64,000 nt of DNA from Magallana gigas. Lineage: Eukaryota. Below the pieces are notes generated by a model. The model was given only the letters and a program-made list of their open reading frames with translations. It searched no databases and was not told the DNA's origin. Positions 15,030 to 34,800 of the stretch are shown in pieces (the stretch's first letter is position 1; each line of letters begins with the position of its first letter). Made by a program: the position numbers and the translations under genes. The stretch is from the NCBI RefSeq assembly GCF_963853765.1, contig NC_088857.1, positions 56,234,001-56,298,000 on the forward strand. Direction: 5' to 3'.

Positions 15030-18000
15030 TCATCTTTTCCTTTTATTAAACTTAAATGGTTCATTTGTTGGAGTATTCCAGTGTTGTTCAGTTGGTTGGA
15101 GTAAGGTTGATGGTGACTCAGATAATATCCGGACGGACTCCGCCATGGCCGCCTGTATCCGCGCAACATTCCAGTCTCTGATCCGTGCAGCCATGTATTC
15201 CTCACTGTTTTTATTACCACAGAATGGGTTCATTATTATAGTATATTGATGATCTAACTTGGGTATTATTTTACCAGATTTCAAGCAAATATCATAAACG
15301 TTGAAATCAAAGTCTTTATAAAACTGAAAAAATCCACACAGAAGTTGGTCTAATGACTTTGTTTCTACTGTTTCTACACACTTCCATTCCTCCCCATCCA
15401 CTGGAGACTCTGTAATAAACAGAACAGTGGGTTATTGAAGTCTAGAAAACGGTTACAAGTCACAGTCGTCTAAAAGACTGGCTTATCTAAGGAATAAGGA
15501 ATCATTCTTTGAGTATTATGAGGTGATAATTTTGGTCGGGGCATGATCAAATCCAAGAAGGGCTTCATGATAGATTTGATCACGCCCCGACCGAAATTAT
15601 CTACTCATAATATTCAAAGAATGATTCCTTATTACTTATATTTACGGGATATAATTTTAAGCTATTGTACGATTATATATACAAATATAAATAAGCAAAT
15701 CCCGCTGGCGCCCCAATTATACGTCATTTGAAGTTATGGGTTATATACATGTAGTACAAAATCGATTCGTAGTGTTATCACTGGCAAAGACACTGGAAAA
15801 TGTAAATATTGCAAAATAATGTACATATACAACACAATGGATAAAAACAAAGGAAAAGAAAGACTGACTGATAAAATGAGAGAAAAAGAGAAACAAAATT
15901 AAAAAATAAACTGAAAAACAAGATTAATAACATGAAAAACAAACTGAAATAGAAAGACAAAAAATAAGAAACAGACAGAAACTGAGTGACCAAGGACACA
16001 CATCAGAAAGTTTTGGATCCCACAATGCATTAGTGGACATTAAAGTGACTCGGTTGAATTATTGGATACTTACTATTTATAACCTTGATATTCTGAATCG
16101 GGGGTATGATTTGGCACCGCTGTAGATAGAACAAGGCTAAGGCTGTGAAGACAAACTTGGACGGGAACCAGTCTACGTACAGCTTGGTCCACAGCTTAAC
16201 GGTCATAATGAAAGGTACCACACTCGGAGAACAACGGCTCAATGCATTCAGACATATAGTGGCAGTTTTTCCTGACGAATTTATAGATCTGAAATGAGAG
16301 TTTAAAACTAACAGAAGACCAAACAGTCATACAGTAATATCTAATCAAGAAATAAATGTGGTTTTGAATTCATTTCCACAGCCAAAATCTTTTTTTTTTT
16401 TAAATTGTTAGGTATGGATGGTAAGTCTCAACTTCCTAATACAATTTTGACATTTTTTCAGAAGGTATAGTCTCTATTTACTGTAACAATATGAAATTTG
16501 ATATTTTTTACTGGTATAAAGTCTACACTTACTGGTACAATTTGACATTTTTTTTTCTGGTATGACAAGTCTCAACTTCTCCATTGGATAGAATATTTGA
16601 CAGGTCATAACTTAACCATTGGATAGTATACTTGAATGGTTGTAACTTATCCATTAGTTAGAACATTTGACAGGTTGTAACTTTTCTATTGATAGAATAT
16701 TTGACAGGTCGTAACTTTTCTATTGATAGAATATTTGACAGGTTGTAACTTATCCATTGGATAGAATACTGGACAGGTTGTAACTTATCCATCAAAAGAA
16801 TATTTGACAGGCTGTAACTTAACCATTGGATAGTATACTTGACTGGTTGTAACTTATCCATTAGTTAGAACATATGACAGGTTGTAACTTTTCTATTGAT
16901 AGAATATTTGACAGGTCGTAACTTTTCAATTGATAGAATATTTGACAAGTTGTAAGTTAACCATTAGATAGAATATTGGACTTGTTGTAACTTATCCATC
17001 GGATAGAATATTTGACAGGCTGTAACTTAACCATTGGATAGTATACTTGACTGGTTGTAACTTGTCCATTGGATAGTAAACTTGACTGGTTGTAACTTTT
17101 CTATTAATTGAATATTTGACAGGTCGTAACTTTTCTATCGATAGAATATTTGACAAGTTGTAAGTTAACCATTAGATAGAATATTTGACTGGTTGTAACT
17201 TATCCATCGGATAGAATATTTGACAGGTTGTAACTTTACCATTGGATCATATACTTGACTGGTTGTAAGTTATCCATTGGTTAGAATATTTGACAGGTTG
17301 TAACTTAACCATTGGATAGAATACGGGACAGGCTGTAACTTATCCATCGGATAGAATACATGAAAGGTTGTAACTTATCCATTGGATAGAATATTTGACA
17401 GGTTGTAACCCATCCATTGGATAGAATATTTGACTGGTTGTAACTTCTCCATTGGATATAATATTTGACTGGTTGTAACTTAACTATGTATAGAATATTT
17501 GACAGGTTGTAACTTATCCATTGTATAGAATATTTGACTGGTGATAACTTATCTATTGGATAGAATATTTGATTGGTTGTAACTTATCCATTGTATAGAA
17601 TATTTGACAGGTTATAACTTATCCATTGGATAGAATATTTGACTGGTTGTAACTTATCCATTGGATAGAATATTTGACAGGTTGTAACTCATCCATTGGA
17701 TAGAATATTTGACTGGTTGTAACTTATCCATCAGATAGAATATTTGACTGGTTGTAACTTATCCATCAGATAGAATATTTGACAGGTTGTAACTTTTCCA
17801 TTGGATAAAATTTTTGACAGGTTGTTACTTATCCATTGGATAGAATATTTGACTGGTTGTAACTTATCCATCGGATAGAATATTTGACTGGTTGTAACTT
17901 ATCCATTGGATAGAATATTTGACAGGTTGTAACTTATCCATTGGATATAATATTTGACTGGTTGTAACTTATCCATTGGATAGAATATTTGACAGGTTGT

Positions 18001-21000
18001 AACTCATCCATTGGATAGAATATTTGACTGGTTGTAACTTATCCATCGGATAGAATATTTGACTGGTTGTAACTTATCTATTGGATAGAATACTTGACTA
18101 GTTGTAACTTATCCATTGGATATAGTATTTAACTAGTTGTAACAGGTGTCTACTTACTGGTAGGAAATGTCTCCCCCAACCTCTAGGAGCCTGTTATGGT
18201 ATTTTATGATTGGAACACGGGCATGGAATATTGAAAGAATGCTGTTGTAACTGTCCAACATTTTCAGTTTTTTAGCTATTTCACTTAGTAATGCTGTCTC
18301 ATTAGCCTGCTTTTGTCTGCTTCCCTGAAATGCAGAGTGTGGCAAAGTGAACATCAACAGTAGTAAACATACAGCAATATACTGTAGATTCCTAGTAATA
18401 CATGAGGGATAAAATATCTGCGAAAAATCGCTAGAAGCGCATCTCACGAATTTTGAAATCTTGCTTTTATGTTTCGGACTGATGTAAACTTAATGTATCT
18501 ATGGAAAAAAAAAATTGGCATTCACGATTTTAGGCCATTCCAAGTTTTTTCTATGTTTAGCGTCCGCGAACAGATTGGTTTTCAGATGTTAACATAAAAA
18601 AAAAAACCCACAATAGTTGTTCATTAAATTCGATCGTTTTTTTTTTTTTGTATATCGGGCTCGGGATCGCATGTTTAAATCGGGATCGAAAATCAAATAC
18701 ATGTACTTATAAACAACATTCAAAATGCAAAATGTCAGTTCTACTATAATGCAGGGAATTTATTTGTTTTTTATTTCTTACATGAAGTTTGGTGCCAAAG
18801 ATATGGATTTTTTTTTACTATATTACATATTGTATTTGTTATTTTTGTTACAAAATAAAGAAAATACCTCAAAATATATATTAAATTTTTTTTTGTTGAA
18901 CCTTTAAAGTTGTGTGTTTTTTCTAAGGTTTGTGTTTTTTTTCCTGATAGAAAGACAAGTTTTTGAGTTTTGGGTGGACGCTAAACAAAGGAAAAACTTG
19001 CAATGGCCTTATATTTCTGCAATTTAATGCAATATGGTTGAATTGCAGAATTACCGTAAGTACTTGCATAAAATAAGGAATCTACCCTACACTATTATCT
19101 GGTTCAATTACCACTTGATATTAGAGACTTTGAATTCACTTTCACCACTTTATACTTCCAGGTCAGGAATAGCAAAAGTTACTGTTCACATTTATAACAA
19201 TACTAAAACATCTATCAACAAGAAAAGACCTATTTGAGTGTGGAATTTCATTTAAAAACTGTTTTAAAAAAGATGACAAACTCTCAACATCAAAGTGATT
19301 TTGACAGCGAGGATGAGAGGACAGAGATAGTATGATGATATACGAACGGTGTAAACAAGGGCAGTGTCAAGGTCACTGGTATCACAGATGAACCCATTCA
19401 ACACCGATCCAAATGGCACCACCAGGTAATTGGGTCGGGTCAAGTCCACTACGTCCTGGATACACTGTCTGAGGAAGAACAACACCTGCTGCCTCTCTGA
19501 TTGGTTCTTCGTCCTGTTGCCGAGGATTTTCATCTGCCCCTCTATCTACACAAAAAAAAAGAACAAACAAAAAGTAACAACAACTATTTTCTGTTGAATG
19601 AAAACAATTCTAGTAAGGGGCTTATCTTACTGTTTCATTCATCAGAAGTCTTTGATAATTTCTCTGCTTCAGAACTGAAATATTCTTGCACACAGGCTGT
19701 TGTGTTGAGTTGAACTTTTTCCTGTTTATCCACATCAGAAACACCCTTTTTTCTGTCTGCTTAATAGACACAGAGTCTGACTGCAAGGTAGAAGCAAACT
19801 CTGTGAAACATAAAGGAGGACACAATGGTTTAATATGGACGCCATGCGACTTTAAAAAGCAAAATACAGTTGTTGGGTAATCAATGAAAAGTCACACCAA
19901 AGTAAGACGTCTGCAAGTCTAGAAGACTTCTTATGTAGGAAAGACGGAAAGATTAAATGATATGAGATGGAGAAAGCATATTATTGCAAAACTCATTAAC
20001 TGAACTTGAAGGGACCATATTAACAATATGTCATAAACGAAATTCATTATACATTTATAGCAATTTCAAGGAGCCATATTAAAAAATTATTAACTGTAAT
20101 TCATTATACATTTCAGCCAATTCTTAAGAAAAATTAATGGCTAACTTGTTATAAAAATCAGTTAACAGTGCTTTCAACTATCGTTAGTCATAAATCTTAA
20201 TCAATATTACCATCATTCACAAGAAATGTCAATACATGTATTATAATCTTTCCACTTCAAATATTTTCACAAATTTTGTACATTGTATGAATGCTTTATG
20301 TAGGCATCTTAAAATTTCATGTATCTTCAATGAAATTTGAAACAAAAAATATTTCTTATACCAGTAGTTGTATATTTGCTTGTTTCCATGTTTGTTATAT
20401 TCGTGTTTTGCTGAATATCCTCTACTGATTTGGGGTAGATAAAGAAACTATTGAATTCTGGACTTACATTACACCTACGGAACCCTCCGGAAAGAATGTC
20501 TGAGATATCAGTCTCATAGGTGACTAGTATAGCCTGCAAAAACAGAAAATGATAACTACCCCATGATGTATTCAGCTCAGATCAACAGACTAAGACCCAT
20601 TACAAGATAACACCCCTTCCCCCCCCCCCCCCAATCCAAAGTATTTTTTCAATTTGTACTAAAAAAATTACATCTATAAGAAATCTGAGATGATCCTTTT
20701 TTTTTACAATTTGACTAGTTTTCTATGTTTGATTTACATCTTGGACAAAACATTTGATCTTGAAATAAATTAAATATATCAAAAGAAGTCCATCTCTTAA
20801 CTCCCTGTCCAGAACTCGTTAATCGACCTTGTTATGAATTTTGAGGACTCTGGAGACAGGGGCCATGCTTTCACAGACAGTGATACACTCGGAGATGGTC
20901 CGTTGTGGACAATGAGCGAGGATGGACCGTTCCGCCGCCTGGACACACCTCCGGAATTCCTCCGACTCGTAAATGTCCGGGATTGACCAGGCCTGACCGT

Positions 21001-24000
21001 CGTCTGGGGGATCCTCCATCATTTCCATCCTCGTGTCTCCACCTGGTTCAAAACAGTATTTTGAAAGTTCATAAAAACCAAACAGGGCCCGAGTATTTTA
21101 TTTTTTTAATAATATGCTAACCTTGGTATCTGTATTCCAATACACAGAATAAAGTTTACAGTTCATCAATATCCTATATCAATTGTGTCTTACCAGGAGC
21201 AGATTTATTAGGTGACTTGACATCTTTCAAACAAAATTCTCCATGTTTATCCATCACCCAGACCCTGGGGCTCCTCTGTAAAAATCAACGCAGTTCTAAA
21301 AGCCTAACTTTTGGTACCGGAAACATTAATTTAAATTCAAAGGTGCTAGATCTAAGCTTTTAGAATGCAAAGAATATCAAATAATTAATGCATCTTAATT
21401 TCAAAGAAAAAAAGTTATAATTGTTGAAATTTTAAACTATCAAAAATTTGGATATAAAATTTCAATATCGATAGCAATGAAAATCAAAGAGGTGTTAAAC
21501 ATATCCCGGCCATAAAATTTTCAACTTACTACCCATCACATGATTATGTTGACGAATTTACAAAGACTTATTGATATTCCTTGGCATTTATTTAGTTTCA
21601 AATATCAATTAAACATCACAAATTTGGCTACATTTTTCCTGATTCATTCAAATCTAAGTAGGTCACTTTTGTCAACATAAGACAGTCTTGGGGCTGGTTG
21701 AATCTACATCCAAACTTTAACACTGATAAAATTTGTGCAAGATAGTCAACATATGTCCCTCCATCTGATCTAACTCCCAATGTCTGACAACAAAACTAAC
21801 TCCCATTGTCTGGACCTACCAGTTCTACCTCCTCTGACAACAAAACCAACTCCAAATGTCTGGACCTACCAGTTCTACCTCCTCTGACAACAAAACCGAC
21901 TCCCAATGTCTGGACCTACCGGTTCTACCTCCTCTGACAACAAAACCAACTCCAAATGTCTGAACCTACCAGTTCTACCTCCTCTGACAACAAAACCGAC
22001 TCCCAATGTCTGGACCTACCGGTTCTACCTCCTCTGACAACAAAACCAACTCCCAATGTCTGGACCTACCGGTTCTACCTCCTCTGACAACAAAACCAAC
22101 TCCCAATGTCTGGACCTACCGGTTCTACCTCCTCTGACAACAAAACCAACTCCCAATGTCTGGACCTACCGGTTCTACCTCCTCTGACAACAAAACCAAC
22201 TCCCAATGTCTGGACCTACCGGTTCTACCTCCTCTGACAACAAAACCAACTCCCAATGTCTGGACCTACCGGTTCTACCTCCTCTGACAACAAAACCAAC
22301 TCCCAATGTCTGGACCTACCGGTTCTACCTCCTCTGACAACAAAACCGACTCCTCTTTCTTCAGTCTCTCTCTATCCACATCCTGCTTTGAAGTACCTGA
22401 AAAGACAGGTAAGTAAACAATCATTGGTAAGCTATAGTATTGTAAGCTATAGCATTGTAAGTATGAGCGATGGAGACACTACATCATTATCTTGCAATAA
22501 GTGGGAAATAGGCAAGCTCTGGTTCCTTTTGTGTATTCTCTTTTGAGAAGTGGACAGGCATAGGTGTCTATGACATCTCATCGAAAAAATTCATCGATGC
22601 AACAACTCACCGAATGGACAGCTCATCGATACGACAAGTTATGGAATAGACATCTCATTGATACGACAATACATTGATACTCATCGAAAGTAAAAATAAA
22701 AGTGAAAAAAGTAGACACTCAAAGTGAAAAGTAAAATACAATAACTGATAGGTATCAAAAATTTAAATTGTATTCGCACTGATTAACATTTACATTAATA
22801 CCTTATATTGTGTGCTAACTTTCAAGGTATGGTAAATAATTGCCATTAGCGACTCGTTCTCCGAATGTTGAAACGATGGAGTAAATCTTTTTCTTTTTTT
22901 TTTCCTATAACTTTTTTTTTTCATTTTTCCGATGACAAATGTAAATAAACCATTGTAAGCTAATTTGTTTTTATTCCTTTGTGAAGGAATAAAAGTAAAA
23001 TGATTATCGCTTCCTCCCTCAGCCTTATCGTGACTGAGAATAAAATGAAGACAATAACCTAAAAAGTGTTCAAACATTTATATTTTTACTTCAAATTATA
23101 TCGATGAATTGTCGTTATCCACAAGATGTCTTTCCTTGACATGTCGCGTTGGTGAGTTTTACTTTCGATTAGTTGACTTTCGATGAGTTGTCGCATTCGG
23201 CAAGTTGTCTTTCGATGAGATGTCCGGTACCGCAGGCATAGCCTACATCCCCTTCTCTTTACAAAAATTCAGGGAGATTGGAGTCAAAACATGGGTCGAA
23301 GCATAGACCTTCTACAGTTCCGACATTTACACGTTCTCCAGAATCAATATATGAGGGCTTGCAAAAGAGAAGTGGATGTAGGCTATGCCTGTCCACTTCT
23401 CAAAAGAGAACACCTTTTGTGTAAAAAACGAACAACATAAACACAAACTGTTGATATTTATACATTGTATATTTTCTTAAAAGCTCGAAAACATGTTTCA
23501 TTTGAGTGTCTACACTTGATACTGAGAAATGAAATTTATTCAAGCCATGTTAATGGAGTCTATTTCAAATTCCACCACTTTATAAATTGAGATTATAAAT
23601 TGTGGAATATTTTGAATTTGCTGGCTGTAGCATTTCAAGCTAAAGAAGTGGAAAGAATCAATTGTTAACAAGTCTCACCTTTAGGTCAAGTTAAACAGTA
23701 TTTGTATATATGTACCTATGACTTGGACCTCTGAATCAATCATTCATTAGTACCAATCATTATTACATCTAATTTACCTGTGACTGTAAAACCAAAAAAT
23801 ATTGTTAGTATTATCACTTTGGTTAGGTTATGTATATTAGTTATATATATCACATGTCATCATATAAATCCTCCTTTTATCTGTTATTTTTGTGTATCAT
23901 TTATGATCCATCATGGATTAGCTTTTCACTTTAATCTGTTAGCTATTGTGTATCAATTATGACCCATCATGGATAAGCTTTTCACTTTCATCTGTTAGCT

Positions 24001-27000
24001 ATTGTGTATCAATTATGACCCATCATGGATTAGCTTTTTACTTTGATCTGTTAGCTATTGTGTATCAATTATAACCCATCATGGATTAGCTATTTACTTT
24101 GATCTGTTAACTATTGTGTATCAATTATAACCCATCATGGATTAGCTTATCACTTTGATCAGTTAGCTATTGTGTATCAATTATAACCCATCATGGATTG
24201 GCTTTTTACTTTGATCTTCACACACAATATGACCACACCCAAGCTATCCACTAATCACCAAAGCTGACCCATCTTAACAATTACAGCTATAGATCAACCA
24301 ATCATAGATTGGCTTCTTAATTGATTGGATAAATTAACCAATCAATACACAGGTAAAAGTCTATAAGCCAATGATAATCTTTGTTAGCATCCCAAGCTGA
24401 AAATAATCAGAATCTGGGTCTATAAAAAGACAGAGTAAGCTGGCTGGTCATCAATCACCCATTGTGATCCAATCTAAGTTAACACAGTGCTATTGCCAAC
24501 CTCTAAACATAGAATCAGCATATCTCTTAGGTGGAGAAATTGTTCACCTAATTCGTGTTGTGAAATATCACTGTTTTTTCTTTGTTGTCTTATGTAAAAA
24601 ATTGTATCAGTGAATTGTGAGTCAGTGTGAAAAGTGACAAAGTGCATTTAGTGTGTTCTAGTGTCAATAGTGTGTTGTAGTGTCAGTGTAGTGTTCCACC
24701 ATGGCTTCTCGTTCTTCCTCCCCCGCCATTGCCATCAACTTCACCACCACTCTTGAAGACATCATCAAGGCCACCATCTTTGACGATGCCCCACCCAGCC
24801 CTCAACTCGCCACCAGCCCAGACAACACCAGCGTGGACACTACTCAAGCGGAGACCAGATTTGACGAGTGCCTCAACTCCCTCTTCAGTGACCATCCCAC
24901 ACCAGAGAAATCCCATGACCTTCACTCTGACTTCCACCTTGCTCTCCAGTGTCTTCCACCGACCAGTCCAAAGAAGATCTTCAGTGACAGCACCATCTCC
25001 TCCACAGAGATCTTCACCGCTCTCAAGTCCATCTTCCGCTCAGAAGCTGACTCATCCACTCCTTCTGTGCTCATCAAGTCCGTCCAACCAAAGATTTCAC
25101 CAGCCGACCGTGAACAGCAACTTCTGCAGAGATTCAAGACCCTCCGTTCCTTTCATCCCCAGGAGATCAACGACTTGTCTTCCTTCTTCAAGTACCAGAG
25201 TGCCCAGGTGGAGACTGACCGCTACTGTGCCCTTCATCAGAACTCCAACCAGCCCCTCCACATCAGAGAGAGCATCAACCAACACTACAACATCACCCAC
25301 CACCGCATCATGGACCGTGTGGAGAGCAGTCTTCAGTTCCTCGAGGACAACCTTCCCACATCCTCACCCACCCAGACCGCCTCCCCACAGCAAAAGACCA
25401 CCACCAAGAGCAACCTTCGTAGCAGACCATCCCTGTCCCAGAAAGCCGTTCAGCTGATGGAAGAGTGGTACTACAGTCACCGAGATAACCCCTACCCACC
25501 CTCTCACATCATCCAGGACTTGGCCAGGAAAGGAGGAGTCAGGGAGGAGCAGGTCAAAAAGTGGTTCTCCAACAAGAGGAACAGAAGCCGAAGGTCATCA
25601 GGGGTCAACAAGAGGAGGTCAACCGGTGTCATCAAGAGTGTGCCCTGCTTCTGGTGAATGTGCTCTGTGAAATCTGTGTGTGCAATGCCTGTAAAATGTG
25701 ATGTCTGTGAAATTTGATGTCCTGTGAAAACAATCTTGTGAATGCGCCATTGCTGTGTGATTTTCATCTTGTGTGTGCTATGTGTGTCATATGTGATGTG
25801 TTTGCAAACCTTCAATAGCCGTTTTAGTGTTAAACATAATGTCTTTGTGCTACTTTAGTTTGCTGTGCTTGTGCTTTTTGATGTATGGTGCTGTGTTCAA
25901 TCCATTTATATATTAGTTTGTTAATTTTGTTGATTGAAACATTGCTCTAGATCAGGGCTTTAGATCTTATATACATTTGTGTTTTGTTATGAAATTCAGC
26001 TATTCTGTAGTATATTTAAGTGATGATTATATAGTGCTCATTGTAATGTTTCACCAAGTGTTGCATGCTCCTTCAGCTTTGTGTGTTTTTGCCTATAGTG
26101 CTATAAATAATTTATGAATATTCAATGAAAAGTGCTACCATTTACTAATATAAATGCATGTATCATGTTATTATTGCCTTTAATATTAAAATAAATAAAA
26201 ATTAGAAAGGTGCTGTTCTTGCTATATGCAGTTTGAATTAAAATTAAATTATACAGTTTGAACATCTTGAGGCCATGAATTGATTAGAGATACAGGATAC
26301 AGTGGAATAGAATTTGGTGGCTCAATTTTCTTGGTTTTTGTGGGTAGCCCTCGCCCACGAATTTACATCCTCAATGAAAACTAATTATAGAAGATATATT
26401 TTATCTTCTGAAATTAAAAACTAACACATCCACAAATTACATCCCCTCAAATATGCAAAAACCCACAATCCACAAAAATTATCCCCCACAATATTAAATG
26501 ATTCCACAGTACTTCTACACAAGTTGCAGCTTTTTCTTGTCAATTAGTTTTTGAGATGAATATTTTTTTTTAAATTGTTACATATATAATCCTGAGTAAA
26601 AAATTAACTACACTGTGGCCTTTGAAAGGGGATCTACATTTCTTGAGGATGCTTCCCAGCAAAATACAGCTAATCTTGCTGATTGGTTTTTAAGAATTAA
26701 TTTTTTTTTAATTTTTTTTTTCTCGATATATAACAATACCAAAAATTTGCCCCCCATTATGGCACCACCCTACCCCCAAGGATCATGATTTTAACAAATT
26801 TGAAAATAAACCTAAGGATGCCCAAGGAAGTTGAGGTTTTTCTGGCTGATTGGTTTTTAATTAAGAAGATTTAAAAGACTTTTCTCTATATATTCCCATT
26901 AAAAGATTTTCTTTTTTTTTTCATTGTAGTCTATCCGACCCAACAAGGATCATGTTTTAAACAAACTTGAATCTACATTCTTGAGTGTGCTTTAAAAATT

Positions 27001-28518
27001 TCAGCTATTCTGGCCACATGGTTTTTAAGAAGATTTTTGAAAAAATCAAACAAATTTTCAATGATTCTTGTAAATCCCCCCTTGAAGGATGGCATGGTCC
27101 TTCATTTACGATCAATCTGGTGATTAAATTTCCCTCGAAGTACAATATTCACATCGCCTTGGCTCTGTGAAACAAAACCATCATACCTTGATGCTTTTCT
27201 TTCTTTCTTTTTTTCCTCTTCTTTGAAGTTGTTGACTTCAAAGACAAAATCTGAAAATGACAAATCATAACATGATATATAGCTAGACAGATAAGTGCTA
27301 TGATTTCTTTAGTGCATCCATTTCTACAACATTCTGCTACTGTGTCTGTACCTCATCCGGACCTCCTGTTGTGGTATCTATATCTGTGGTAGGTTTATTA
27401 GCAGATAAACTATGAGGTGACGAGGACAAACTTCTGCCTGTCTGCAATGAGTTGGCACTCTTACCAAAAATCCATCTTGTACATGGATGACCACCTGAAG
27501 AAAAAAAAAAATTACTGACAATATCGATACTTCCAACAGCTTTCGATAAACAGTACTGCAGAAGCACTCATTTGATCAATTGATAATACCGAGCGCAGCG
27601 AGAGGCGGGCGAAGCCCGCCTCGCGAAGCGAGGATTAATGGTAACACATATATATAAGAAAATCAGTGAAAAATGAAAGTTGAATCAGGGGTACTAAGGC
27701 CAAAAAAAATTTCTTCCAGCCCTGGGCGCCGCCATATTGGCAGCCATTTTGTTTTTAAAAAGTTAGTTCGGTCATTGATTGACTGGTACTTATCGATGTT
27801 TATTGCCCTTAAACTCGATTAAAATTTTCTAGTGTTTCAATAAAAGGTAATTTGAATTAAAAGAAATAAAAGAGGACACCAGATAAGTTTCAATAGTGCT
27901 CTAATCAAGAAACACGACTAATTCTATGTATATCTTATCAAATTACCAGATGGAAAATAAAAACATTAACATCAAGGAACTGATCTTTTAGATACTGAAT
28001 AAAGTATTAAATTTTATTACCGCGGCATTTATATGAATTAAATTGTTAAACAATGAAAGAAGAAATAAAAAAAAAGTTCGGAATAACGTTACTCTCTTCG
28101 GCTATTTCCGAAGACAAAACATGTACGTTTTACGTCTGAAACATGACGTCATAATTTAGACTGAGCACGCCACGTTTAGTTAAACTTTGGCTAATGATTT
28201 GAGTACGTAACCAGGCGGATCCTACTGTGTGCGTTTCAAATAAATTAGTTCTACAAAAATCAATCTGCACTGTGTTAAATCTGCGCTCGGTCCAACGGTC
28301 ACACCGTTTACATATTAACTTTTGAGGAAATTCGAATTGATGTAAAAAAAATGAATACATTTTTCCGTTAAGTTTTTTTTCATGTGACAAGATAAATAAT
28401 CAATGTAAACAGAATTTTTCAATGAATTACTTGGTTGAATTCGGGGTGAAACATTAGAAACGTCTCTTAAAACATGTGTAAATGCACTTCGCCACATTCT
28501 TCCAATGAGCGCAGCCAT
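15030..28518 (-). CDS. MTPAP: Divergent mitochondrial poly(A) polymerase-like terminal nucleotidyltransferase (TENT family), 11 exons, ~564 aa
   Basis: Exons (minus): 28518-28431, 27494-27352, 27250-27187, 22396-22320, 21275-21194, 21042-20828, 20533-20468, 19545-19348, 18324-18158, 16288-16074, 15409-15030. All GT-AG, phases match, 1695 nt open. Arg-rich presequence-like N-terminus; AERSILAHCP (recalled human mtPAP AQRTVLIHCP); PFGSVLNGF..SDLD; ARVPIIKY..GDIS; SLDQLLCGFFQFYKDFDF and IMNPF (PAP-associated domain). Orthology versus paralogy is untested. Confidence 0.8.
16575..18142. repeat. 35-bp minisatellite, ~45 copies, intronic
   Basis: Unit TTATCCATTGGATAGAATATTTGACAGGTTGTAAC; lies in the intron between exons 18324-18158 and 16288-16074. 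Confidence 0.95.
18531..19011. mobile_element. MITE with AGGCCATT termini (Kolobok-like)
   Basis: TIRs AGGCCATTCCAAGTTTTT..TGTTTAGCGTCC / GGACGCTAAACA..AAAAACTTGCAATGGCCT; T/A-rich flanks. Confidence 0.7.
21772..22352. repeat. 50-bp minisatellite, ~11.5 copies, containing the exon 4 3' end and splice donor of the mtPAP-like gene
   Basis: Unit TCCCAATGTCTGGACCTACCGGTTCTACCTCCTCTGACAACAAAACCAAC; on the minus strand it reads ...GAGGAGGTAGAACCG|GTAGGT. Confidence 0.95.
22536..23412. mobile_element. MITE with ~10-bp TSD (MULE-like) carrying a nested second MITE
   Basis: TIR TTCTCTTTTGAGAAGTGGACAGGCATAGCCTACATCC / GGATGTAGGCTATGCCTGTCCACTTCTCAAAAGAGAA; flanking direct repeat CCTTTTGTGT at 22525 and 23413. 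Confidence 0.75.
22563..23232. mobile_element. Nested MITE with 8-bp TSD
   Basis: TSD CAGGCATA at 22555-22562 and 23233-23240; subterminal IR GACATCTCATCGAAA / TTTCGATGAGATGTC. Confidence 0.75.
23889..24216 (+). repeat. 56-bp tandem repeat, ~6 copies, upstream of the homeobox promoter
   Basis: CATCATGG anchors at 23909, 23965, 24021, 24077, 24133, 24189 (period 56). Confidence 0.95.
24298..24428 (+). promoter_or_regulatory. CCAAT-box cluster plus TATA box of the homeobox gene
   Basis: CCAAT/ATTGG at 24298, 24308, 24324, 24338, 24368; TATAAAAA at 24421, 280 bp upstream of the ATG at 24701. Confidence 0.7.
24701..25657 (+). CDS. Intronless TALE-class homeobox protein with PADRE motif (lophotrochozoan-specific type), 318 aa
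   Basis: Homeodomain ~25418-25606: RSRPSLSQKAVQLMEEWYYSHRDNPYPPSHIIQDLARKGGVREEQVKKWFSNKRNR (three-residue loop extension, NPYP, WFSNKR). Literal PADRE at 25100-25114 begins a helical domain. Codon bias is distinct from the flanks. Confidence 0.9.
   Translation: MASRSSSPAIAINFTTTLEDIIKATIFDDAPPSPQLATSPDNTSVDTTQAETRFDECLNSLFSDHPTPEKSHDLHSDFHLALQCLPPTSPKKIFSDSTISSTEIFTALKSIFRSEADSSTPSVLIKSVQPKISPADREQQLLQRFKTLRSFHPQEINDLSSFFKYQSAQVETDRYCALHQNSNQPLHIRESINQHYNITHHRIMDRVESSLQFLEDNLPTSSPTQTASPQQKTTTKSNLRSRPSLSQKAVQLMEEWYYSHRDNPYPPSHIIQDLARKGGVREEQVKKWFSNKRNRSRRSSGVNKRRSTGVIKSVPCFW
26298..26510. mobile_element. Short MITE
   Basis: Imperfect TIRs TACAGTGGAAT / ATTCCACAGTA. Confidence 0.5.
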
Positions 28519-28817
28519 CTTTTTAAACTCTCTAAGCAAATAAAAGGAAAACATTACAATTCTAGTGTTTCGTGCAACTAAATTACAAATTGTGCGACTA
28601 AGTAAAAGTTTACAAAACGTTCATAGCAAATTTTGTTATTTTTTTTTTACTTTCTCTCAGATTGATTTAAAAAATTTAAAGATAACACGTCTTCGAGAGT
28701 ATACGGCATCATGGCTGGTCATTGAACGTTTCAAACCACTGGGGAAGACTTATAAGAAATTTTTTCACTTGTCGTGTGTGATTTTTTTTGATAGGAACAA
28801 ACGCTATCGTTTCTGTG
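28519..28817. promoter_or_regulatory. Putative bidirectional promoter shared by the mtPAP-like gene and TUT1
   Basis: 299 bp separate the divergent start codons. YY1-like AAGATGGCTGC overlaps the minus-strand ATG. An acceptor-like TTTTTTTTGATAG at 28782-28794 suggests a TUT1 5'UTR intron. Confidence 0.65.
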
Positions 28818-31800
28818 ATGTTTGTTATTTGCGATATATGTCAGTGTGAAATATCCTCAGGTAAGAATACTATAACCATGGTTATAAAGTAACTGAAAGT
28901 AGCTATCAGCTTCTAATGCTGAATTGAGGTTTAATATATATTTATATTTATTTAGCTTTTTAAAATAGCTTGATGATAAAAAATACTCATGATACAGAAT
29001 GGAAATTTAAAAAAGTATTTTGATTGGTAAAAGTTATTAGCCAAAGTACTGACAATTTATCTCAGATGGTGAAGTAATTCTACTGGTAGGCCTAGTTTCA
29101 ATTTTTACAACCCATTAAGAGAGTTATAGAGTTTCCTTTAAATCGAATTTTATCTTATAACTTTTTTATTTACGAGTAAAATCTGTTTGTAGCGGATCTT
29201 TATGAATACCACGTCAATGGGAAGAGACATCAGGTCCAACTGGAGCGGTACAAACGCCGGAAGGACGAGTCCGAGCGCAGTGTGTACGCCCGGGGATTCC
29301 CACCCTCCACCCAGGAGCACGAACTGCTGGCCTACTTCTGCATGTTTGGACCGGTGGAAAAAATAGTTTATGATGAAAAGAAATCCATGAAAACTGTAAG
29401 TCATTGCCTCTTGTATATCAATCTTTGTGAACTTGATGAATTTTTTTCTAGCTTTTTAAATGGAACATTTAATACATTGCTTGTGATTTGATTCATGAGT
29501 TTTAAAGTTTATTGATAAGCTCATTTTCTTCTGCCAAGTGTTGGCATAACAAGCAAGAACTGATCGTCTTTCTTATATTGACTTTCTAATGAGATACCTA
29601 AGTCAGCATAATGAAGTATTTAGAGAGTAGGGAGCTTGTTTTGGGATTGGTGGGAATAATATTATCTGATAAACATTTGTTTGTGACAAAATCCTATCAT
29701 GATATTCATCAACCAGGATAGATGCTTTAATTTTGTACTTATTGAAAACAATGTTTTATATCAGAAAGTTCCTGCTTTTGCCATTGTGGAGTTTAAATCA
29801 GCTGACACAGCAAGATCAGTGGCAACTTATGGGCAGCACGTCATTAACAGTCAGCGCATAGAGATCAGGCCACGCACATTTAAAGAACTGCGAACAGAGC
29901 CCTACTTTCCATGGCAACGGGAAGATAACAATAGGGATCTGCCGTGGCAGAAGTATAACGAGTTACACCAAAAGCTGTCCGCCAACAACATACAGATGGG
30001 TCCCTACGAAGCCGCTCAACCACGGCGCAAGGGGAAAATAAAAGGCCCCGCACCCATCAAGCAGGGGAGAGCCAAGGATTCCGAGGGTCAGGACATCGTA
30101 CCCATCGATGTGAAGGAGTTCCAGACTTATCTGGAGCAGCATCAGTGTGTCGGGGTAAGGCTTCCAACTATCCTTTAGGGATAAGAGTGCTTGATGAATT
30201 AGCAATGAAGAAGGAGTAAGGCAGTAATGATGTAGTATAAGGCTGCTACAATGTAAGATCGTGTAAGCATTTGGTAATTTCAATCATGATTGTCTAGTCG
30301 TTTTGGGTGATATCATCAATTTTTGTTCTGTTGTTTGTATTGATTTCAATGGATGTAAAAACAAATCAAATTATGTACTAAATATGAAATTCATCATTTT
30401 ATTTACATGCATGTTCAATGCATTGATGAATATCTTTTAAATCAGTTTATTTAAAATGACTGTTTGTGCTTGATATCCTTGGGTGTTGACATACAAAAAA
30501 GGAATACCTTCAAGTAGTATTTACTAAAAAAAAAAAAATAACTGAATTAGAAACGTTTTAACAAGAGCTTGTACTTTGGGCAGTATGTGACAAATCCAAT
30601 TTGATTCTGGTGGGGTCTACTCATGTATTTTATCTAATATATATGAATACATTGAAGGCAATGACACCTGTCTGACTTAAACCAGGGATGTATATTTAAG
30701 AAATAAACAACGTTATTTAGTGAACATGGCGTTATGTAGCAATTGCTCTGTTGGCATATTCCATGATGCGCGCTAACGCATCATGGAAAATATGCCAGCA
30801 GAGCAGTTGCTATTCATAACGCCATGTTCACTAAATAATCGTTGTTTATTACTTATATTTGCATTTTACCACTCTCAAATACCCTGTATTAGCATAGACC
30901 TTGATATTTAGCTATTGCATCAAAAATAAACGTTCAGACTGTAATGTATCATTTTAATTCACATAGATTTGTTAACAGAATCAGTGATATGTTATAAAAG
31001 TAATTCCTTTAAAATGTTATTATAAGACATGTTTTAATATTAGATATATCAATTTTATGGAGTTGGAGAAAAACATATGATGTATCGTATAGTTGTTTTA
31101 ATCTATAACGTAATGGAAAAGAATATGATGTCACACCTTTATGATGTCATAGTATACAGACAGCGCAATTGCGATTATAGAAATATATTTGTAGTTCCTC
31201 CGTATGGACTTATAGTGGGAAAGAACAATGGATATGCAAATATTTCCTGGTAACTGTCCATTCATATAACAGAGCAACAGCCTTTGAATATTAATGAGCT
31301 TCTCTTGATAAATTAAAAGAAAGGAGGTCAATATTTGACAGCCATTTTTACTGAGCAAACTAGATAGTAACATCCCACTGAAAGTCCAAGCTCTTGTTAC
31401 AGCTCTAAATGTTTCATTTTCCCCTTGGTATATTGAGTACCAAGTAGTTAACGTCCAAGGATCTCGAGCAGTTTTCTCCTGTATTTAGAAACCTCATCAT
31501 TTATTTTGAACTCCCACTTGATCTGTATCGGTAACGACTTAACAGTTACATCAGTATCGTAACTGACATTGCGGAGTAGTTCTTTAAACCGTGGTTTATC
31601 AGGCACTACAATCGCAGTCAGTCGTGACCTTGCAGAATCAAGTGACCTTGTCCTAGGTTTGACCTTGTCCTAGTTTTGACATGACCATTGCTCTCCCTCA
31701 GATTCAGACCCAGGTGATGTTGTTAGTAGAGCTAACCCAGGTCACCACAGCCGAATTCCAGTCTCGCTACACGATCTGTAAAACTCTGGAGGACGCACTC

Positions 31801-34800
31801 AGTCCGTTCTTTCCAGGTTTGTCTCGGGAAGTTCAAAAGCATCCCAACAACCATTCATTGCTTTTCAAATGTACATGTAATAGTATACATTCATTTGTAT
31901 ATATGCGACATAAATGCACTTGATCTCTTAATTTGAGGTGATCAATTCCAGCAATTATTTGTTTAATTTGTATATTGTGAGCAAATGTATATATCATGAT
32001 GCTGATAGCTTTTATGATACTTTATGAGTTAAAAGTGTTTAAATTTTTAAAGCAAAAGGTCACTTACAATATATTGATAAAGGTTTTTGTCATACCTGTA
32101 TTTACTGTATTTACTATATCCAGATTTAAAATTAACACATACTGTAGATAAATGTAATGTGATGTATTAAGCTTTGAGATTGGTATTCTATTTTAATCAG
32201 GGTAAATCTTCATGTTGATCCGTTTTCATTAATGTACCAGGAATGACAGTGAATCAGTTTGGATCCTCGGTCAATGGTTTTGGAATCAAGGGCTGTGACA
32301 TGGACGTCTACATTGATCTGACAAAACTGGGAATTCCCTGCCGAACCTCAGTAAGTGGGTCAGCAACAGATGAGGTGATCTCTAAATTTGGTTTTAGATG
32401 AGTCCCGGAAACATAAATCTTCTTCAATCGAGAATCATTTTTTAAGCAGTGTGGTGTACTTACATTGAATGTAAAATGATTTTGATAAATGCATTTGTAA
32501 ACTTATCAAGTGATAATGTGCCTCATTTCTCCAAGGCTAAATTCATGACGCTAATATTTCTTTCATCTCTTGTACTGGCGTCAGTGCTAACTGCCTTCTT
32601 GTTTTTGTCCCTCAGAACATTGTACTACACTATATCAAGGAAATGTACACACGCGAACTAACTGCTTTCTTGTTTGTCCCTCAGAACATAGTACTTCCCT
32701 ACATCAAGGACCTGTACACACTGAAGAAGAAGAACAGTGGCCCCCTCTCCCAACAGGAAGTGGACAACATGCGCCCCATGGACAAACTGAAGCTCATCCA
32801 GCGCATCATCACTGAGCACGCTCCGTCGTGCATGGACACACGCATCATCCCGAGCCAGCGCTGTCCGATCCTGCGATTCACTGACTACAACTCCCAGATC
32901 AAGTGTGACCTCTCTATCAATAATAAGTAGGTCCTGACTCCAGATTAATAAAGTTAAACACTCAATTTTCTAAAAAAATATTTTTAACATTTTGAAATCT
33001 CTAAAATGCGTACAAATTACAGTAAAATTAATTAGATAAGAATTTCATAATTACATGATCTTTCCCAGTGACCAGCCAAACCATTGTTATAATGTTTTGG
33101 GGTTTATTTATGGTACCTTAATTCTTAACTTTGTGCACACATTTGTCATAAGTCCTGAGTGAGTAAATCAACTGGTACATGTAAATATACAATATTTCAG
33201 TGTTACTGGTAGAAGTCTTTTCTCTTTAATTCCTCATCAACTGATAGCATTGGTTTGATATTTAACTGAATAAAGTTTCTGTCTTTTCTGTATTACAGAC
33301 TGGCCCTACAGAACACGCTTCTCCTACAGACTTTAAGTCTGTTCAAATTGTTGAACTTGTTTATCACTCGTTGGAAAATAAATGTTATTTAATTAATTCG
33401 TTACAAATTACAGACTGGCCCTAGAGAATACGCTTCTCCTACAGACTTTAAGTCTGTTCAAGTTGTTGAACTTGTTTATCAATCGTTGTAAAATAAATGA
33501 TATTTAATCAATTTATTACGTTTTTCAGACTGGCCCTTCAGAACACGCGCCTCCTGCAAACCTTCAGTCTGTTTGACGCTAGGATAAAGCCCCTGGTCTA
33601 CTCAATCAGGTACTGGGCCAAGCTGAAGGGCATCGCGGGGAACCCCCAGGCCTGTAACCGCCTGTCCTCCTACGCCCTAACCATGCTGGTCATCTACTAC
33701 CTGATGAACACCACGCCCCCGATACTACCCCCGGTGGAGGAGCTCTCCAGGATGTGTGGTCAGTAGAAAATAGAACTCCCCAAACCTCAGAAAAACAAGT
33801 TGTCATTTACCTTTACATTATATACAATATGGTTAAACACTGTTACAGAGACACATTAATTTCATGATGTATCAACACTTAGAGCAAGGTTGATGTCTTT
33901 CATATAATCTTAGACATGCATAATAAACTCATTAACAAATTGTGTTTACAATGAATTAGTGGTGTTGCCCCTGTTATTCCCAATGATCCTGATCAACTGT
34001 ATATTGAACACTTTGTAGAGATGAGTTTTTCTATTGCCCCCGGTGCTCCCTTTAGCCCTATTCTACTGTGTGATGAATTCTGTGTAGAAATAGGGTTTAA
34101 GTTTTCTATTATTCTATTAAAATATGTCATGTTTCTTATGGGTTTCTTTATTTTGTAGGGAGAGATAGGACCATTGTTGACCAATGGGATTGTTCCTTTG
34201 TGTCGGCTCAGTTCATGCCTCCCACCCCCAACATACAGACCATAGGTATTGTACACTGTTTTGTAAATTCAGTTTAGTTGCTCTAGAGCAACAGTTTGGA
34301 TTTACAATTAATTGTGATAGTCATTTTTTACACATATACCGTATTTTCCCGACGACTCGTCGAATTGCTCATTTTTAGCCAAAATGTCAACAAAATCCTA
34401 CGATACGTCGATTCAGACCATGCTTCGATCTTATCACTTCAAAATGGCGTATAAAACTGCAGTAACATTATCAGTGTATGATGCCACGATGTCCCCGATA
34501 TTGCTACCAATTATTATTAATGATTAACATTTAAACAATTACGCTTTAAACTTATGCATCATATTTTCAAATACCGGCAACATCTTCAAAGTCGCTTTCA
34601 TTTTAAACAATTCCCGATATCGCGTGTTATGCAAAACTAAACTTACTTTGTCAGAAATATTTTATTCCCAAGCATAAAATAATTATCCACTCTGACTATC
34701 GCCAGTGTATTCGCCATTACGTAACCAGCCACCTGTTGACTCGGCGCGTGGTCAATGTTTGTTTAACAATTTCCGGTGTCATAGGCATGCACCTGTCTCG

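What the first reader, a model, noticed from the sequence alone, without database searches (positions are those of the whole stretch)
28431..28860. Two paralogous terminal nucleotidyltransferases head-to-head on a 300-bp shared promoter
Seen: the mtPAP-like ATG (28518, minus) and the TUT1 ATG (28818, plus) diverge. They share intron positions: phase 0 before IEGQ/IQTQ, phase 1 eight codons after the PP motif, and phase 2 shortly after the third Asp. Knowledge: mtPAP and TUT1 are related TENT enzymes; I do not recall them being linked in vertebrates. Inference: either a relic of the inverted duplication that created the pair, or a lineage-specific co-regulated nuclear plus mitochondrial RNA 3'-tailing module.
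Basis: partly seen in the sequence, partly recalled or inferred. Interest (0 to 1): 0.7.

Follow-up and report, generated by a model that had tools for sequence, protein, structure and literature searches.

The report
Oyster TUT1 and mtPAP-like genes, head-to-head
Two related RNA-tailing enzyme genes, one like the nuclear U6 uridylyltransferase TUT1 and one like the mitochondrial poly(A) polymerase, start 299 bp apart on opposite strands in all five oyster genomes I could check, which may preserve the ancient duplication that made the pair, although I could not test animals outside oysters and insects.

Summary
A TUT1-type gene (+, ATG 28818, 10 coding exons, 932 aa) and a fast-evolving mtPAP-type gene (-, ATG 28518) diverge from a 299-bp spacer. 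RNA reads confirm the first introns of both genes. The observed cDNA 5' ends lie at most 183 bp apart. The pair, with the same carboxylesterase neighbour, is kept in C. virginica, Ostrea edulis and two Saccostrea species (ATG-to-ATG 278-334 bp), so it is not an assembly artefact.

The third has the same phase but sits two codons upstream in the oyster mtPAP-like gene.

A tree groups the minus gene with canonical mtPAP (92/94). Its predicted fold, gene structure and domain order also match mtPAP. An AU test does not reject a later duplication of TUT1 in the oyster lineage (p 0.19).

Three insect mtPAP loci have no TUT1 neighbour within 10 kb. No other mollusc or other non-insect invertebrate could be reached. 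A 2017 paper already proposed that MTPAP arose from TUT1 by duplication in the bilaterian ancestor. The physical linkage appears unreported in the papers searched.

Tight co-expression is not shown: the plus gene is several-fold more abundant in three runs.

The parts
28519..28817 (.). 299-bp spacer between the two start codons, the presumed bidirectional core promoter. It is AT-rich (about 35% G+C) with no CpG island.
   Evidence: Spacer length is kept at 278-334 bp in five oyster species.
28690..28720 (+). The only block of the spacer conserved in all five oysters: AGAGTATA..CATGGC. CATGGC is invariant. The plus-gene cDNA contig starts inside the block at 28706.
   Evidence: Five-species alignment A9 and the adapter-flanked contig end at 28706. 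Reading it as a YY1/Pho-type site is my inference only.
28431..28518 (-). mtPAP-like exon 1 (MAALIGRMWRSAF...). It is basic and amphipathic with one acidic residue in the first 30, which fits a mitochondrial presequence. It ends in phase 1.
   Evidence: The N-terminus MAAL/MAAF is kept in the Saccostrea, C. virginica and O. edulis orthologues. The joint 28431>27494 is seen in RNA.
27341..27494 (-). mtPAP-like exon 2. The acceptor at 27494 is shown by RNA. The donor is undetermined; candidates are 27465, 27352 and 27341.
20828..21025 (-). mtPAP-like exon encoding the first half of the RRM-like (RL-type) N-terminal domain. It ends in phase 0 after ...KIHNK. Its acceptor is not determined.
   Evidence: tblastn of P0004, P0018 and P0019 and the exon model.
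20468..20533 (-). mtPAP-like exon (AILVTYETDISDILSGGFRRCN).
   Evidence: It has canonical AG/GT flanks.
19631..19780 (-). mtPAP-like exon ending ...LLMNET in phase 0.
19348..19545 (-). mtPAP-like palm exon. It starts at the shared phase-0 intron before IEGQ and carries the first two catalytic Asp residues (SDLD).
   Evidence: PF22600, 34.3 bits.
18158..18324 (-). mtPAP-like exon carrying ARVPIIKY and the third catalytic Asp (GGDISY). It ends in phase 2 at Asp+4.
16074..16288 (-). mtPAP-like exon ending in phase 1, eight codons after IPP.
   Evidence: It occurs once in the genome.
15030..15409 (-). mtPAP-like last exon with the PAP-associated domain and C-terminus. The stop codon is at 15032-15030.
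   Evidence: PF03828, 26 bits. The best solved-structure match is chicken mtPAP 5a2v, E 3e-7.
28818..28860 (+). TUT1 exon 1 (MFVICDICQCEISS), the first half of the C2H2 zinc finger. It ends in phase 1.
   Evidence: joint 28860>29193. The peptide is near-identical in four other oysters.
29193..29395 (+). TUT1 exon 2: the rest of the zinc finger (H-x5-H) and the first half of the RRM.
   Evidence: Human TUT1 8idf/9j8p residues 32-93, E 5e-7; joints.
29765..30154 (+). TUT1 exon 3: the second half of the RRM and a linker.
31702..31816 (+). TUT1 exon 4. It starts at the shared phase-0 intron before IQTQ.
   Evidence: Joint 30154>31702.
32241..32350 (+). TUT1 exon 5 with FGSSVNGFG and the first two catalytic Asp residues (CDMD).
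   Evidence: PF22600, 34.2 bits.
32685..32926 (+). TUT1 exon 6 with the third catalytic Asp (KCDLS). It ends in phase 2 at Asp+6.
   Evidence: PF22600, 33.9 bits. Joint 32350>32685 and the loose end at 32926 that reads exon 7.
33529..33758 (+). TUT1 exon 7. It ends in phase 1, eight codons after LPP.
   Evidence: Human TUT1 match of 60 bits. It occurs once in the genome.
34159..34245 (+). TUT1 exon 8.
   Evidence: Conserved with Saccostrea; splice sites.
35735..35856 (+). TUT1 exon 9 with the PAP-associated motif LLYGFFQYF..FDF.
   Evidence: PF03828, 24.9 bits.
36970..38226 (+). TUT1 terminal exon (418 aa plus stop). It holds the DPFVLNH nucleotide-selecting histidine, an acidic low-complexity stretch and a conserved C-terminal domain of about 110 aa.
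   Evidence: The fold prediction of this exon failed (pLDDT 36).

Best explanation
**What is there (shown).** This is a divergent pair of single-copy genes.
- The plus gene is the oyster TUT1/TENT1 orthologue, the U6 snRNA-type terminal uridylyltransferase. Its order is zinc finger, RRM, Cid1-type catalytic core with the UTP-selecting histidine, then a long C-terminal extension.
- The minus gene is a very fast-evolving gene of mitochondrial poly(A) polymerase (mtPAP/TENT6) type. It has a basic N-terminal presequence, an RRM-like domain, the catalytic core and no KA-1-type tail.
- It is the only mtPAP candidate found in this genome.
- Both genes are transcribed and spliced.
- The arrangement is kept in four other oyster genomes spanning Crassostrea/Magallana, Saccostrea and Ostrea.

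**Origin (inferred).** The two genes are ancient paralogues made by a DNA-level duplication rather than retroposition. Every intron of insect mtPAP has a same-phase counterpart, in the same order, in oyster TUT1. The head-to-head arrangement is most likely inherited from that inverted duplication rather than re-created later.

**How the spacer works (inferred).** The roughly 300-bp spacer acts as a compact bidirectional promoter without a canonical TATA box. One conserved CATGGC-containing block sits at the TUT1 transcription start. The two outputs are unequal, so what is shared is probably an open promoter region rather than strict co-regulation.
For: **Gene models and RNA**
- The exon models translate without stops to 932 aa for the plus gene and to a 457-aa partial product for the minus gene.

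**Conserved linkage**
- S. echinata, S. cucullata, O. edulis and C. virginica all show the order TUT1-like (930-939 aa), mtPAP-like, COesterase.
- The ATG-to-ATG spacers are 301, 334, 278 and 308 bp.

**TUT1 identity**
- The zinc finger plus RRM matches human TUT1.
- Exon 7 matches human TUT1 at 60 bits.
- The DPFxxNH motif aligns with the active modules of TUT4/7 and with human TUT1. His549 is the UTP contact in human TUT1.

**mtPAP identity**
- The last exon best matches chicken mtPAP.
- The proxy P0019 aligns over residues 30-432 with chicken mtPAP residues 49-496.
- The AlphaFold model has pLDDT 90. Its top ten Foldseek hits are all chicken mtPAP (TM 0.71-0.75), against 0.54-0.58 for human TUT1.
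- A tree rooted on other oyster TENT genes puts oyster mtPAP-like with canonical mtPAP at 92/94 support.
- A genome search with Halyomorpha mtPAP finds only the two window genes.

**Gene structure**
- Six genes share the phase-0 intron at alignment column 386.
- The phase-2 and phase-1 introns are also shared.
- Three TUT1-only introns are absent from both oyster mtPAP-like and insect mtPAP.

**Published view**
- PMC5509036 concluded from phylogeny that MTPAP arose from TUT1 (its TUTase6) by duplication in the bilaterian ancestor.

**Divergence**
- The two window genes are 25% identical in the catalytic core. That is no closer than either is to insect mtPAP at 26-30%.
Against: - The linkage is seen only in Ostreidae. 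Halyomorpha, Tribolium and Aphis mtPAP loci have other neighbours within 10 kb. From my own knowledge, human MTPAP and TUT1 are on chromosomes 10 and 11.
- No other mollusc or other non-insect invertebrate could be checked.
- The AU test does not reject a clade of oyster mtPAP-like plus oyster TUT1 (p 0.19).
- The mtPAP-like gene evolves so fast that an oyster-lineage duplicate could already look ancient. It is 49% identical between Crassostrea and Saccostrea in the core, against 86% for TUT1.
- The structure model leaned on an alignment made mostly of insect mtPAPs.
- Pfam's RL domain is not detected by sequence in the minus gene.
- NCBI's automatic names call this gene TUT1-like in some oyster records and mtPAP-like in others.
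- Expression is unequal and, across three runs, not visibly correlated.
Confidence: 0.55

Rival explanations
1. Lineage-specific origin. Before the oyster families split, TUT1 was duplicated in inverted orientation. The copy lost the zinc finger and the C-terminal domain, gained a presequence, diverged very fast and replaced the ancestral mtPAP. The adjacency would then be young, not a bilaterian relic.
For: - The gene family is found only in Ostreidae by three searches.
- The stem branch is extremely long, 2.17 substitutions per site, and within-oyster divergence is very fast.
- The AU test gives p 0.19.
- The exon with the first two catalytic Asp residues best-hits human TUT1, though only weakly (E 0.22).
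- No linkage is seen in three insects.
Against: - The tree favours grouping with mtPAP (92/94).
- The gene lacks exactly the three TUT1 introns that insect mtPAP also lacks.
- It has full-length colinearity and fold similarity with chicken mtPAP.
- At 39 columns that separate mtPAP from oyster TUT1, it carries the mtPAP state 13 times and the TUT1 state once. At least two of those columns are not diagnostic when checked against human TUT1 and chicken mtPAP.
- It is no closer to its neighbour than to insect mtPAP.
Confidence: 0.27
2. Ancient paralogues that were unlinked and later brought together by rearrangement in the oyster ancestor, either by chance or because a shared promoter was favoured.
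For: Nothing direct. The lack of linkage in insects and, from my knowledge, in human allows it.
Against: The chance that a rearrangement places one particular gene head-to-head within 300 bp of its only close paralogue, among tens of thousands of genes, is very small. This is an argument, not a computation.
Confidence: 0.06
3. On function: the spacer holds two independent back-to-back core promoters, and the two genes are not co-regulated. The adjacency is historical baggage with no regulatory meaning.
For: - In three poly(A) runs the depth on fully exonic TUT1 bins is 3 to 9, while the bin holding mtPAP-like exon 1 has depth 0 to 0.6.
- The run richest in TUT1 reads has no minus exon-1 reads.
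- Apart from one block at the TUT1 start, the spacer sequence is poorly conserved between genera.
Against: The spacer length is kept within 278-334 bp and the pair has stayed intact in all five oyster genomes checked, across three genera. That suggests constraint. Three runs sampled at about 1 in 100 reads cannot test correlation.
Confidence: 0.4

Closest known systems
Human TUT1 / TENT1 (Star-PAP, U6 snRNA terminal uridylyltransferase)
   Same: The domain order is N-terminal C2H2 zinc finger, RRM, Cid1-type palm and fingers with DxD...D, the histidine in the DPFxxxH motif that contacts uracil O4, then a long C-terminal extension.
   Different: The proline-rich insert of the human palm was not looked for in the oyster protein. 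The oyster protein has an acidic low-complexity stretch in its last exon. Its C-terminal domain shows no sequence match to the human KA-1 domain, and its fold could not be predicted.
Vertebrate and insect mitochondrial poly(A) polymerase (MTPAP / TENT6; chicken structures 5a2v-5a30)
   Same: The N-terminal presequence, RRM-like domain, palm and fingers are colinear. No zinc finger or KA-1-type tail is present. The intron positions match insect mtPAP. No histidine is present at the UTP-selecting position.
   Different: The core is only 27-30% identical to insect mtPAP. A 6-7 residue deletion lies in the fingers region. A long Ser/Lys-rich insert follows the presequence. The rate of change within oysters is very high. 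The Pfam RL model does not match.
Published hypothesis that MTPAP (TUTase1) arose by duplication of TUT1 (TUTase6) in the bilaterian ancestor (Modepalli and Moran 2017, PMC5509036)
   Same: The sister relation of the two families appears in my tree (91/92 against other oyster TENT genes) and in the shared gene structure.
   Different: In the passages I read (its section on TUTase1/TUTase6 and the Figure 6 legend), that paper argued from phylogeny and presence or absence only. No physical linkage or intron evidence appears there.
Head-to-head paralogue pairs on a shared promoter, such as COL4A1/COL4A2 or histone H2A/H2B (from my own knowledge, not tested here)
   Same: Divergent orientation, a spacer of a few hundred bp, and paralogous partners.
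   Different: Those pairs make subunits used together and are co-expressed. Here the products work in different compartments, nucleus and mitochondrion, and co-expression is not shown.

Membership tests
TUT1 / TENT1 | N-terminal C2H2 (U1/matrin-type) zinc finger | tested here: met
   C-x2-C in exon 1 and H-x5-H in exon 2. Exon 2 aligns with human TUT1 residues 32-93, E 5e-7.
TUT1 / TENT1 | RRM after the zinc finger | tested here: met
   The match to human TUT1 covers the RRM, and the isolated TUT1 RRM 2e5g gives E 4e-4. Pfam RRM_1 gives only 16.1 bits, below its cut-off.
TUT1 / TENT1 | Cid1-type catalytic core with three Asp residues and a PAP-associated domain | tested here: met
   PF22600 gives 34.2 and 33.9 bits (cut-off 27). 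PF03828 gives 24.9 bits (cut-off 22.6). The CDMD and KCDLS motifs are present.
TUT1 / TENT1 | Histidine that selects UTP (His549 in human TUT1) | tested here: met
   DPFVLNH aligns with DPFDLNH of the active TUT4/TUT7 modules and with human TUT1 residues 537-561. The residue's role is described in PMC5467268.
TUT1 / TENT1 | C-terminal KA-1 domain | tested here: inconclusive
   No sequence match was found, as the authors also report for human TUT1. The AlphaFold model from 3 sequences has pLDDT 36, so no fold search was made.
TUT1 / TENT1 | Oligo-uridylation of U6 snRNA | not testable with these tools
   This needs an enzyme assay.
mtPAP / TENT6 | Cid1-type catalytic core with three Asp residues | tested here: met
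   PF22600 gives 34.3 bits and PF03828 gives 26 bits. The SDLD and GGDIS motifs are present.
mtPAP / TENT6 | N-terminal RL (RRM-like) domain before the palm | tested here: inconclusive
   Pfam PF17797 is not found. However, the region aligns with the RL region of canonical mtPAPs. The model of the close proxy P0019 also superposes on chicken mtPAP over about 480 columns, N-terminal domain included. That model was built with a mostly mtPAP alignment.
mtPAP / TENT6 | Mitochondrial targeting | tested here: inconclusive
   The first 30 residues have 4 Arg/Lys, 1 acidic residue and a high helical moment. The same holds in three orthologues. No dedicated predictor or experiment was available.
mtPAP / TENT6 | Orthology: groups with mtPAP rather than TUT1 | tested here: inconclusive
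   The tree gives 92/94 for grouping with mtPAP. The AU test of the alternative gives p 0.19. No non-oyster TUT1 sequence was available.
mtPAP / TENT6 | Only such gene in the genome | tested here: met
   Halyomorpha mtPAP finds only the two window genes in the 564-Mb assembly. The exons tested occur once.
Bidirectional (divergent) promoter gene pair | Opposite strands with transcription starts under 1 kb apart | tested here: met
   The cDNA 5' ends reach at least 28523 (minus) and at most 28706 (plus).
Bidirectional (divergent) promoter gene pair | Co-expression of the two genes | tested here: inconclusive
   Three runs show unequal levels and no visible correlation. The sample is far too small.

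The most novel reading that the evidence does not exclude
The oyster TUT1/mtPAP-like pair is the surviving original configuration of the inverted duplication that created the mitochondrial poly(A) polymerase in the bilaterian ancestor. On this reading, a microsynteny of more than half a billion years has been held together by a promoter region under 200 bp between transcript starts, and it shows how a nuclear snRNA-tailing enzyme gave rise to a mitochondrial mRNA-tailing enzyme.
Probability: 0.45. Interest if true: 0.6.

Novelty: new member of a known kind. Interest (0 to 1): 0.45.

Why it matters
The two enzyme families are well known, and their sister relation has been published. What I did not find in the literature searched is any physical linkage between them.

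If the pair is ancestral, it gives direct genomic evidence for how MTPAP was born. It would have arisen by local inverted DNA duplication of TUT1 with its introns kept. The N-terminal zinc finger would then have been replaced by a presequence, and the C-terminal RNA-binding domain lost.

The locus also offers a natural system to ask whether a nuclear and a mitochondrial RNA-tailing enzyme are co-regulated.

Separately, the oyster mtPAP-type gene changes unusually fast for an enzyme expected to be essential. It is 55% identical in the core between the two Crassostrea species. That may interest people who study mito-nuclear co-evolution in bivalves.

Tried and rejected
1. **Classifying each exon by its best solved-structure hit.** I rejected this as an orthology test because the hits cross over. 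The minus exon with the first two catalytic Asp residues hits human TUT1 (E 0.22), while plus exons 6 and 9 hit mtPAP.

2. **Reaching TUT1 proteins of other animals.** The word-index search only sees proteins 0.55-1.75 times the query length, and no exon is long enough.
   - An alignment of exon translations, each by reference, to the paralogue P0004 was scrambled by MAFFT (A2) and was not used.
   - A trimmed version (A5) aligned well, but the search found oysters only.
   - A profile of canonical plus oyster mtPAPs returned only insect or unnamed sequences in its top 120.
   - The wide synteny survey therefore could not be done.

3. **Exhaustive HMMER search with the minus last exon.** It gave only 15 hits. 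That says little about absence, because a 133-aa query needs about 45 bits against that library.

4. **Pfam RL domain on minus exons.** No hit.

5. **AlphaFold on the TUT1 terminal exon with three sequences.** pLDDT was 36, so KA-1 was left untested.

6. **Count of family-specific columns.** The count was 13 to 1 in favour of mtPAP. I gave it little weight after seeing that human TUT1 keeps Q where oyster TUT1 has M, and that chicken mtPAP has the same FFQYF as oyster TUT1.

7. **The sigma-70 promoter scan.** It was not used because it does not apply to an animal promoter.

8. **Joined spliced models.** None was handed to any search or fold tool; exons were searched one by one by reference. 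For local alignment, intron mapping and the tree, the exon translations were joined only inside scripts and kept in /scratch.

Full report
**Setting.** The window is G000:C5:56234001-56298000 of a 564-Mb assembly in 29 contigs. That fits the RNA runs labelled "oyster metagenome" and the close relatives found.

**Observation.**
- The minus-strand ATG at 28518 opens an exon of 88 nt that ends at 28431 before GTAATT.
- The plus-strand ATG at 28818 opens an exon of 43 nt that ends at 28860 before GTAAGA.
- The start codons are 299 bp apart.
- Six-frame scanning and Pfam show both genes carry the MTPAP-like central palm domain (PF22600) and the PAP-associated domain (PF03828).

**RNA evidence.** I laid three poly(A) RNA-seq runs as raw reads, and one run held as contigs, on 27400-33000.
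- Plus-gene joints: 28860>29193, 29395>29765, 30154>31702 and 32350>32685. A loose end at 32926 reads the start of exon 7.
- Reads lie in the orientation expected for a plus-strand RNA in a standard stranded library.
- One 800-nt contig begins at 28706 directly after adapter sequence. No raw reads lie between 28522 and 28708.
- Minus-gene joint: 28431>27494, in two reads of one run and in one contig (depth 63). That contig has at least 93 nt on the shorter side, so the transcript reaches at least 28523.
- The two observed 5' ends are therefore at most 183 bp apart.
- Depth is 3 to 9 on fully exonic plus-gene bins and 0 to 0.6 on the bin with minus exon 1. The run with the most plus-gene reads has no minus reads.

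**Gene models.** I used RNA joints, canonical splice sites and conservation with Saccostrea.
- The plus gene has 10 coding exons and 932 codons. Annotated neighbours in other oysters have 930-939 residues.
- The minus gene was modelled from the RRM-like domain onward with P0019. This is a 441-aa product of a transcript contig from a close relative, 81% identical in the core.
- The part between exon 2 (27494) and 21025 is not resolved. It holds the nested TALE homeobox ORF at 24692-25654 on the other strand, which is the subject of another finding.
- No joined model was given to any search or fold tool. Exons were searched singly by reference. Joined translations were made only inside scripts for alignment and the tree.

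**Identity of the plus gene.**
- Exons 1-2 give C-x2-C...H-x5-H followed by an RRM. Exon 2 aligns with human TUT1 residues 32-93 (E 5e-7) and with the isolated TUT1 RRM.
- Exon 7 matches human TUT1 at 60 bits.
- The last exon begins with LQDPFVLNHN. This aligns with DPFDLNHN of the active TUT4/TUT7 modules and with human TUT1. In human TUT1, His549 in this motif bonds uracil O4 (PMC5467268).
- The KA-1 domain could not be tested.

**Identity of the minus gene.**
- Its last exon best matches chicken mtPAP (E 3e-7).
- P0019 aligns over residues 30-432 with chicken mtPAP residues 49-496. It aligns with human TUT1 only over about 60 residues.
- An AlphaFold model of P0019 (64-sequence alignment, pLDDT 90) has chicken mtPAP as its ten best Foldseek hits (TM 0.71-0.75 over about 480 columns). 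Human TUT1 scores 0.54-0.58. The alignment was mostly insect mtPAP, which may bias the model.
- The N-terminus is basic, nearly free of acidic residues and amphipathic in four oysters.
- A search of the whole genome with Halyomorpha mtPAP finds only the two window genes. Both genes are single copy for the exons tested.

**Relatives.**
- The exhaustive HMMER search with the last exon gave 15 hits.
- The family was found only in Ostreidae: Saccostrea echinata, S. cucullata, Ostrea edulis, Crassostrea virginica and a Logan transcript.
- NCBI names it either "speckle targeted PIP5K1A-regulated poly(A) polymerase-like" or "poly(A) RNA polymerase, mitochondrial-like", even for isoforms of one gene.

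**Linkage in other genomes.**
- In all four other oyster genomes the order is TUT1-like, mtPAP-like, carboxylesterase, head-to-head, with ATG-to-ATG spacers of 301, 334, 278 and 308 bp.
- The same carboxylesterase lies at about 8081-13464 of the window.
- The mtPAP loci of Halyomorpha, Tribolium and Aphis have other neighbours within 10 kb.
- No other phylum could be reached with the tools and caps available.

**Introns.** I mapped them on one alignment.

| Intron | Where it occurs |
|---|---|
| Phase 0, four residues before the conserved Q-M/Q-V | Same alignment column in oyster TUT1, three oyster mtPAP-like genes and two insect mtPAPs |
| Phase 1, eight codons after P-P/P-S | Oyster TUT1, oyster mtPAP-like and Halyomorpha; lost in Tribolium |
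| Phase 2 after the third Asp | Asp+6 in oyster TUT1 and both insects; Asp+4 in all oyster mtPAP-like genes |
| Phase 0 in the RRM/RL loop | All groups, within a few codons |
| Phase 0 after DxD | All groups, within a few codons |
| TUT1-only (phases 1, 1 and 0) | Oyster TUT1 only; absent from oyster mtPAP-like and insect mtPAP |

The common structure argues for a DNA-level duplication. It also places the oyster minus gene with mtPAP.

**Tree.**
- The tree has 24 rows and 472 columns under LG+C20+F+G4, rooted on three other oyster TENT modules fetched from C7 and C6.
- TUT1 plus mtPAP form a clade at 91/92.
- Oyster mtPAP-like groups with canonical mtPAP at 92/94, on a stem of 2.17 substitutions per site.
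- Holding oyster mtPAP-like with oyster TUT1 costs 5.2 log-likelihood units (AU p 0.19). That alternative is disfavoured but not rejected.
- Core identities:
  - the two window genes to each other, 25%;
  - mtPAP-like to insect mtPAP, 27-30%;
  - TUT1 to insect mtPAP, 26%;
  - Crassostrea to Saccostrea, 86% for TUT1 and 49% for mtPAP-like.

**Spacer.**
- Across five species only one block is conserved, AGAGTATA..CATGGC at 28690-28720. It sits where the plus cDNA starts.
- The minus start codon lies in ATGGC(T/G)GC in all species.
- Both elements resemble the core of YY1/Pho sites, in the orientation of their genes. That is my inference, not a test.

**Literature.**
- Modepalli and Moran 2017 (PMC5509036) reported MTPAP absent from non-bilaterians. 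They proposed it arose from TUT1 by duplication in the bilaterian ancestor.
- Searches for linkage, synteny or a bidirectional promoter of the two genes found nothing relevant.

**Verdict.**
- The most likely reading is an old paralogue pair still in its birth arrangement (about 0.45-0.55).
- An oyster-lineage duplication with very fast divergence is the main rival (about 0.27).
- Strict co-regulation is not supported by the little expression data at hand.

Noticed in passing
window 27587-28317: A 731-bp dispersed repeat lies in intron 1 of the mtPAP-like gene. It has at least 700 candidate copies genome-wide at 92-97% identity, and several loci hold head-to-tail tandem copies. RNA depth is very high on both strands, reads break off sharply at both ends, and one joint goes back 729 bp. 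A GC-rich hairpin lies at 27594-27630. It may be a Helitron-type or satellite-like element.
   Followed up: partly
window 30579-30952: A stretch in TUT1 intron 3 has RNA reads on both strands at several times the depth of the flanking exons, with many variant letters. It is probably another expressed repeat.
   Followed up: no
window 24692-25654 (+): An intronless ORF with a TALE/KN homeodomain (PF05920, E 2e-10) lies antisense inside the mtPAP-like gene, between its exon 2 (27494) and its later exons.
   Followed up: no
window about 8081-13464 (+): A carboxylesterase (COesterase) gene lies tail-to-tail with the mtPAP-like gene. The same neighbour is kept in all four other oyster genomes.
   Followed up: partly
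window 15030-21025 (-), and P0004, P0018, P0019: The mtPAP-like protein changes very fast within oysters. Core identity is 55% between C. gigas and C. virginica and 49% to Saccostrea, against 86% for the neighbouring TUT1. It also has a 6-7 residue deletion in the fingers region and a 2-residue indel right at the phase-2 splice junction.
   Followed up: partly
window 28712-28726 (+): The conserved CATGGC block holds an ATG followed by an in-frame TGA after 4 codons (2-3 codons in Saccostrea), only 6 nt from the observed TUT1 cDNA start. It may be a tiny upstream ORF or simply part of a promoter motif.
   Followed up: no
L007:10001-11650: The Aphis gossypii mtPAP gene is intronless, because the locus translates directly to the protein. 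The Halyomorpha gene has six introns and the Tribolium gene five.
   Followed up: no
L003:741-4467: A single Logan contig of 4.7 kb from an unknown organism carries two mtPAP-type ORFs in tandem, of 604 and 497 aa.
   Followed up: no
L006:1-9925: In Tribolium, mtPAP is head-to-head (76 bp) with an N-terminal glutamine amidase gene, and a PIP5K gene lies about 4 kb away. This is probably coincidence, given that human TUT1 is named for its regulation by PIP5K1A.
   Followed up: no
window 42951-44612 (+): A 554-codon open frame begins with Cys/His-rich B-box-like zinc-finger motifs, so it may be a TRIM-like gene. It was not examined.
   Followed up: no
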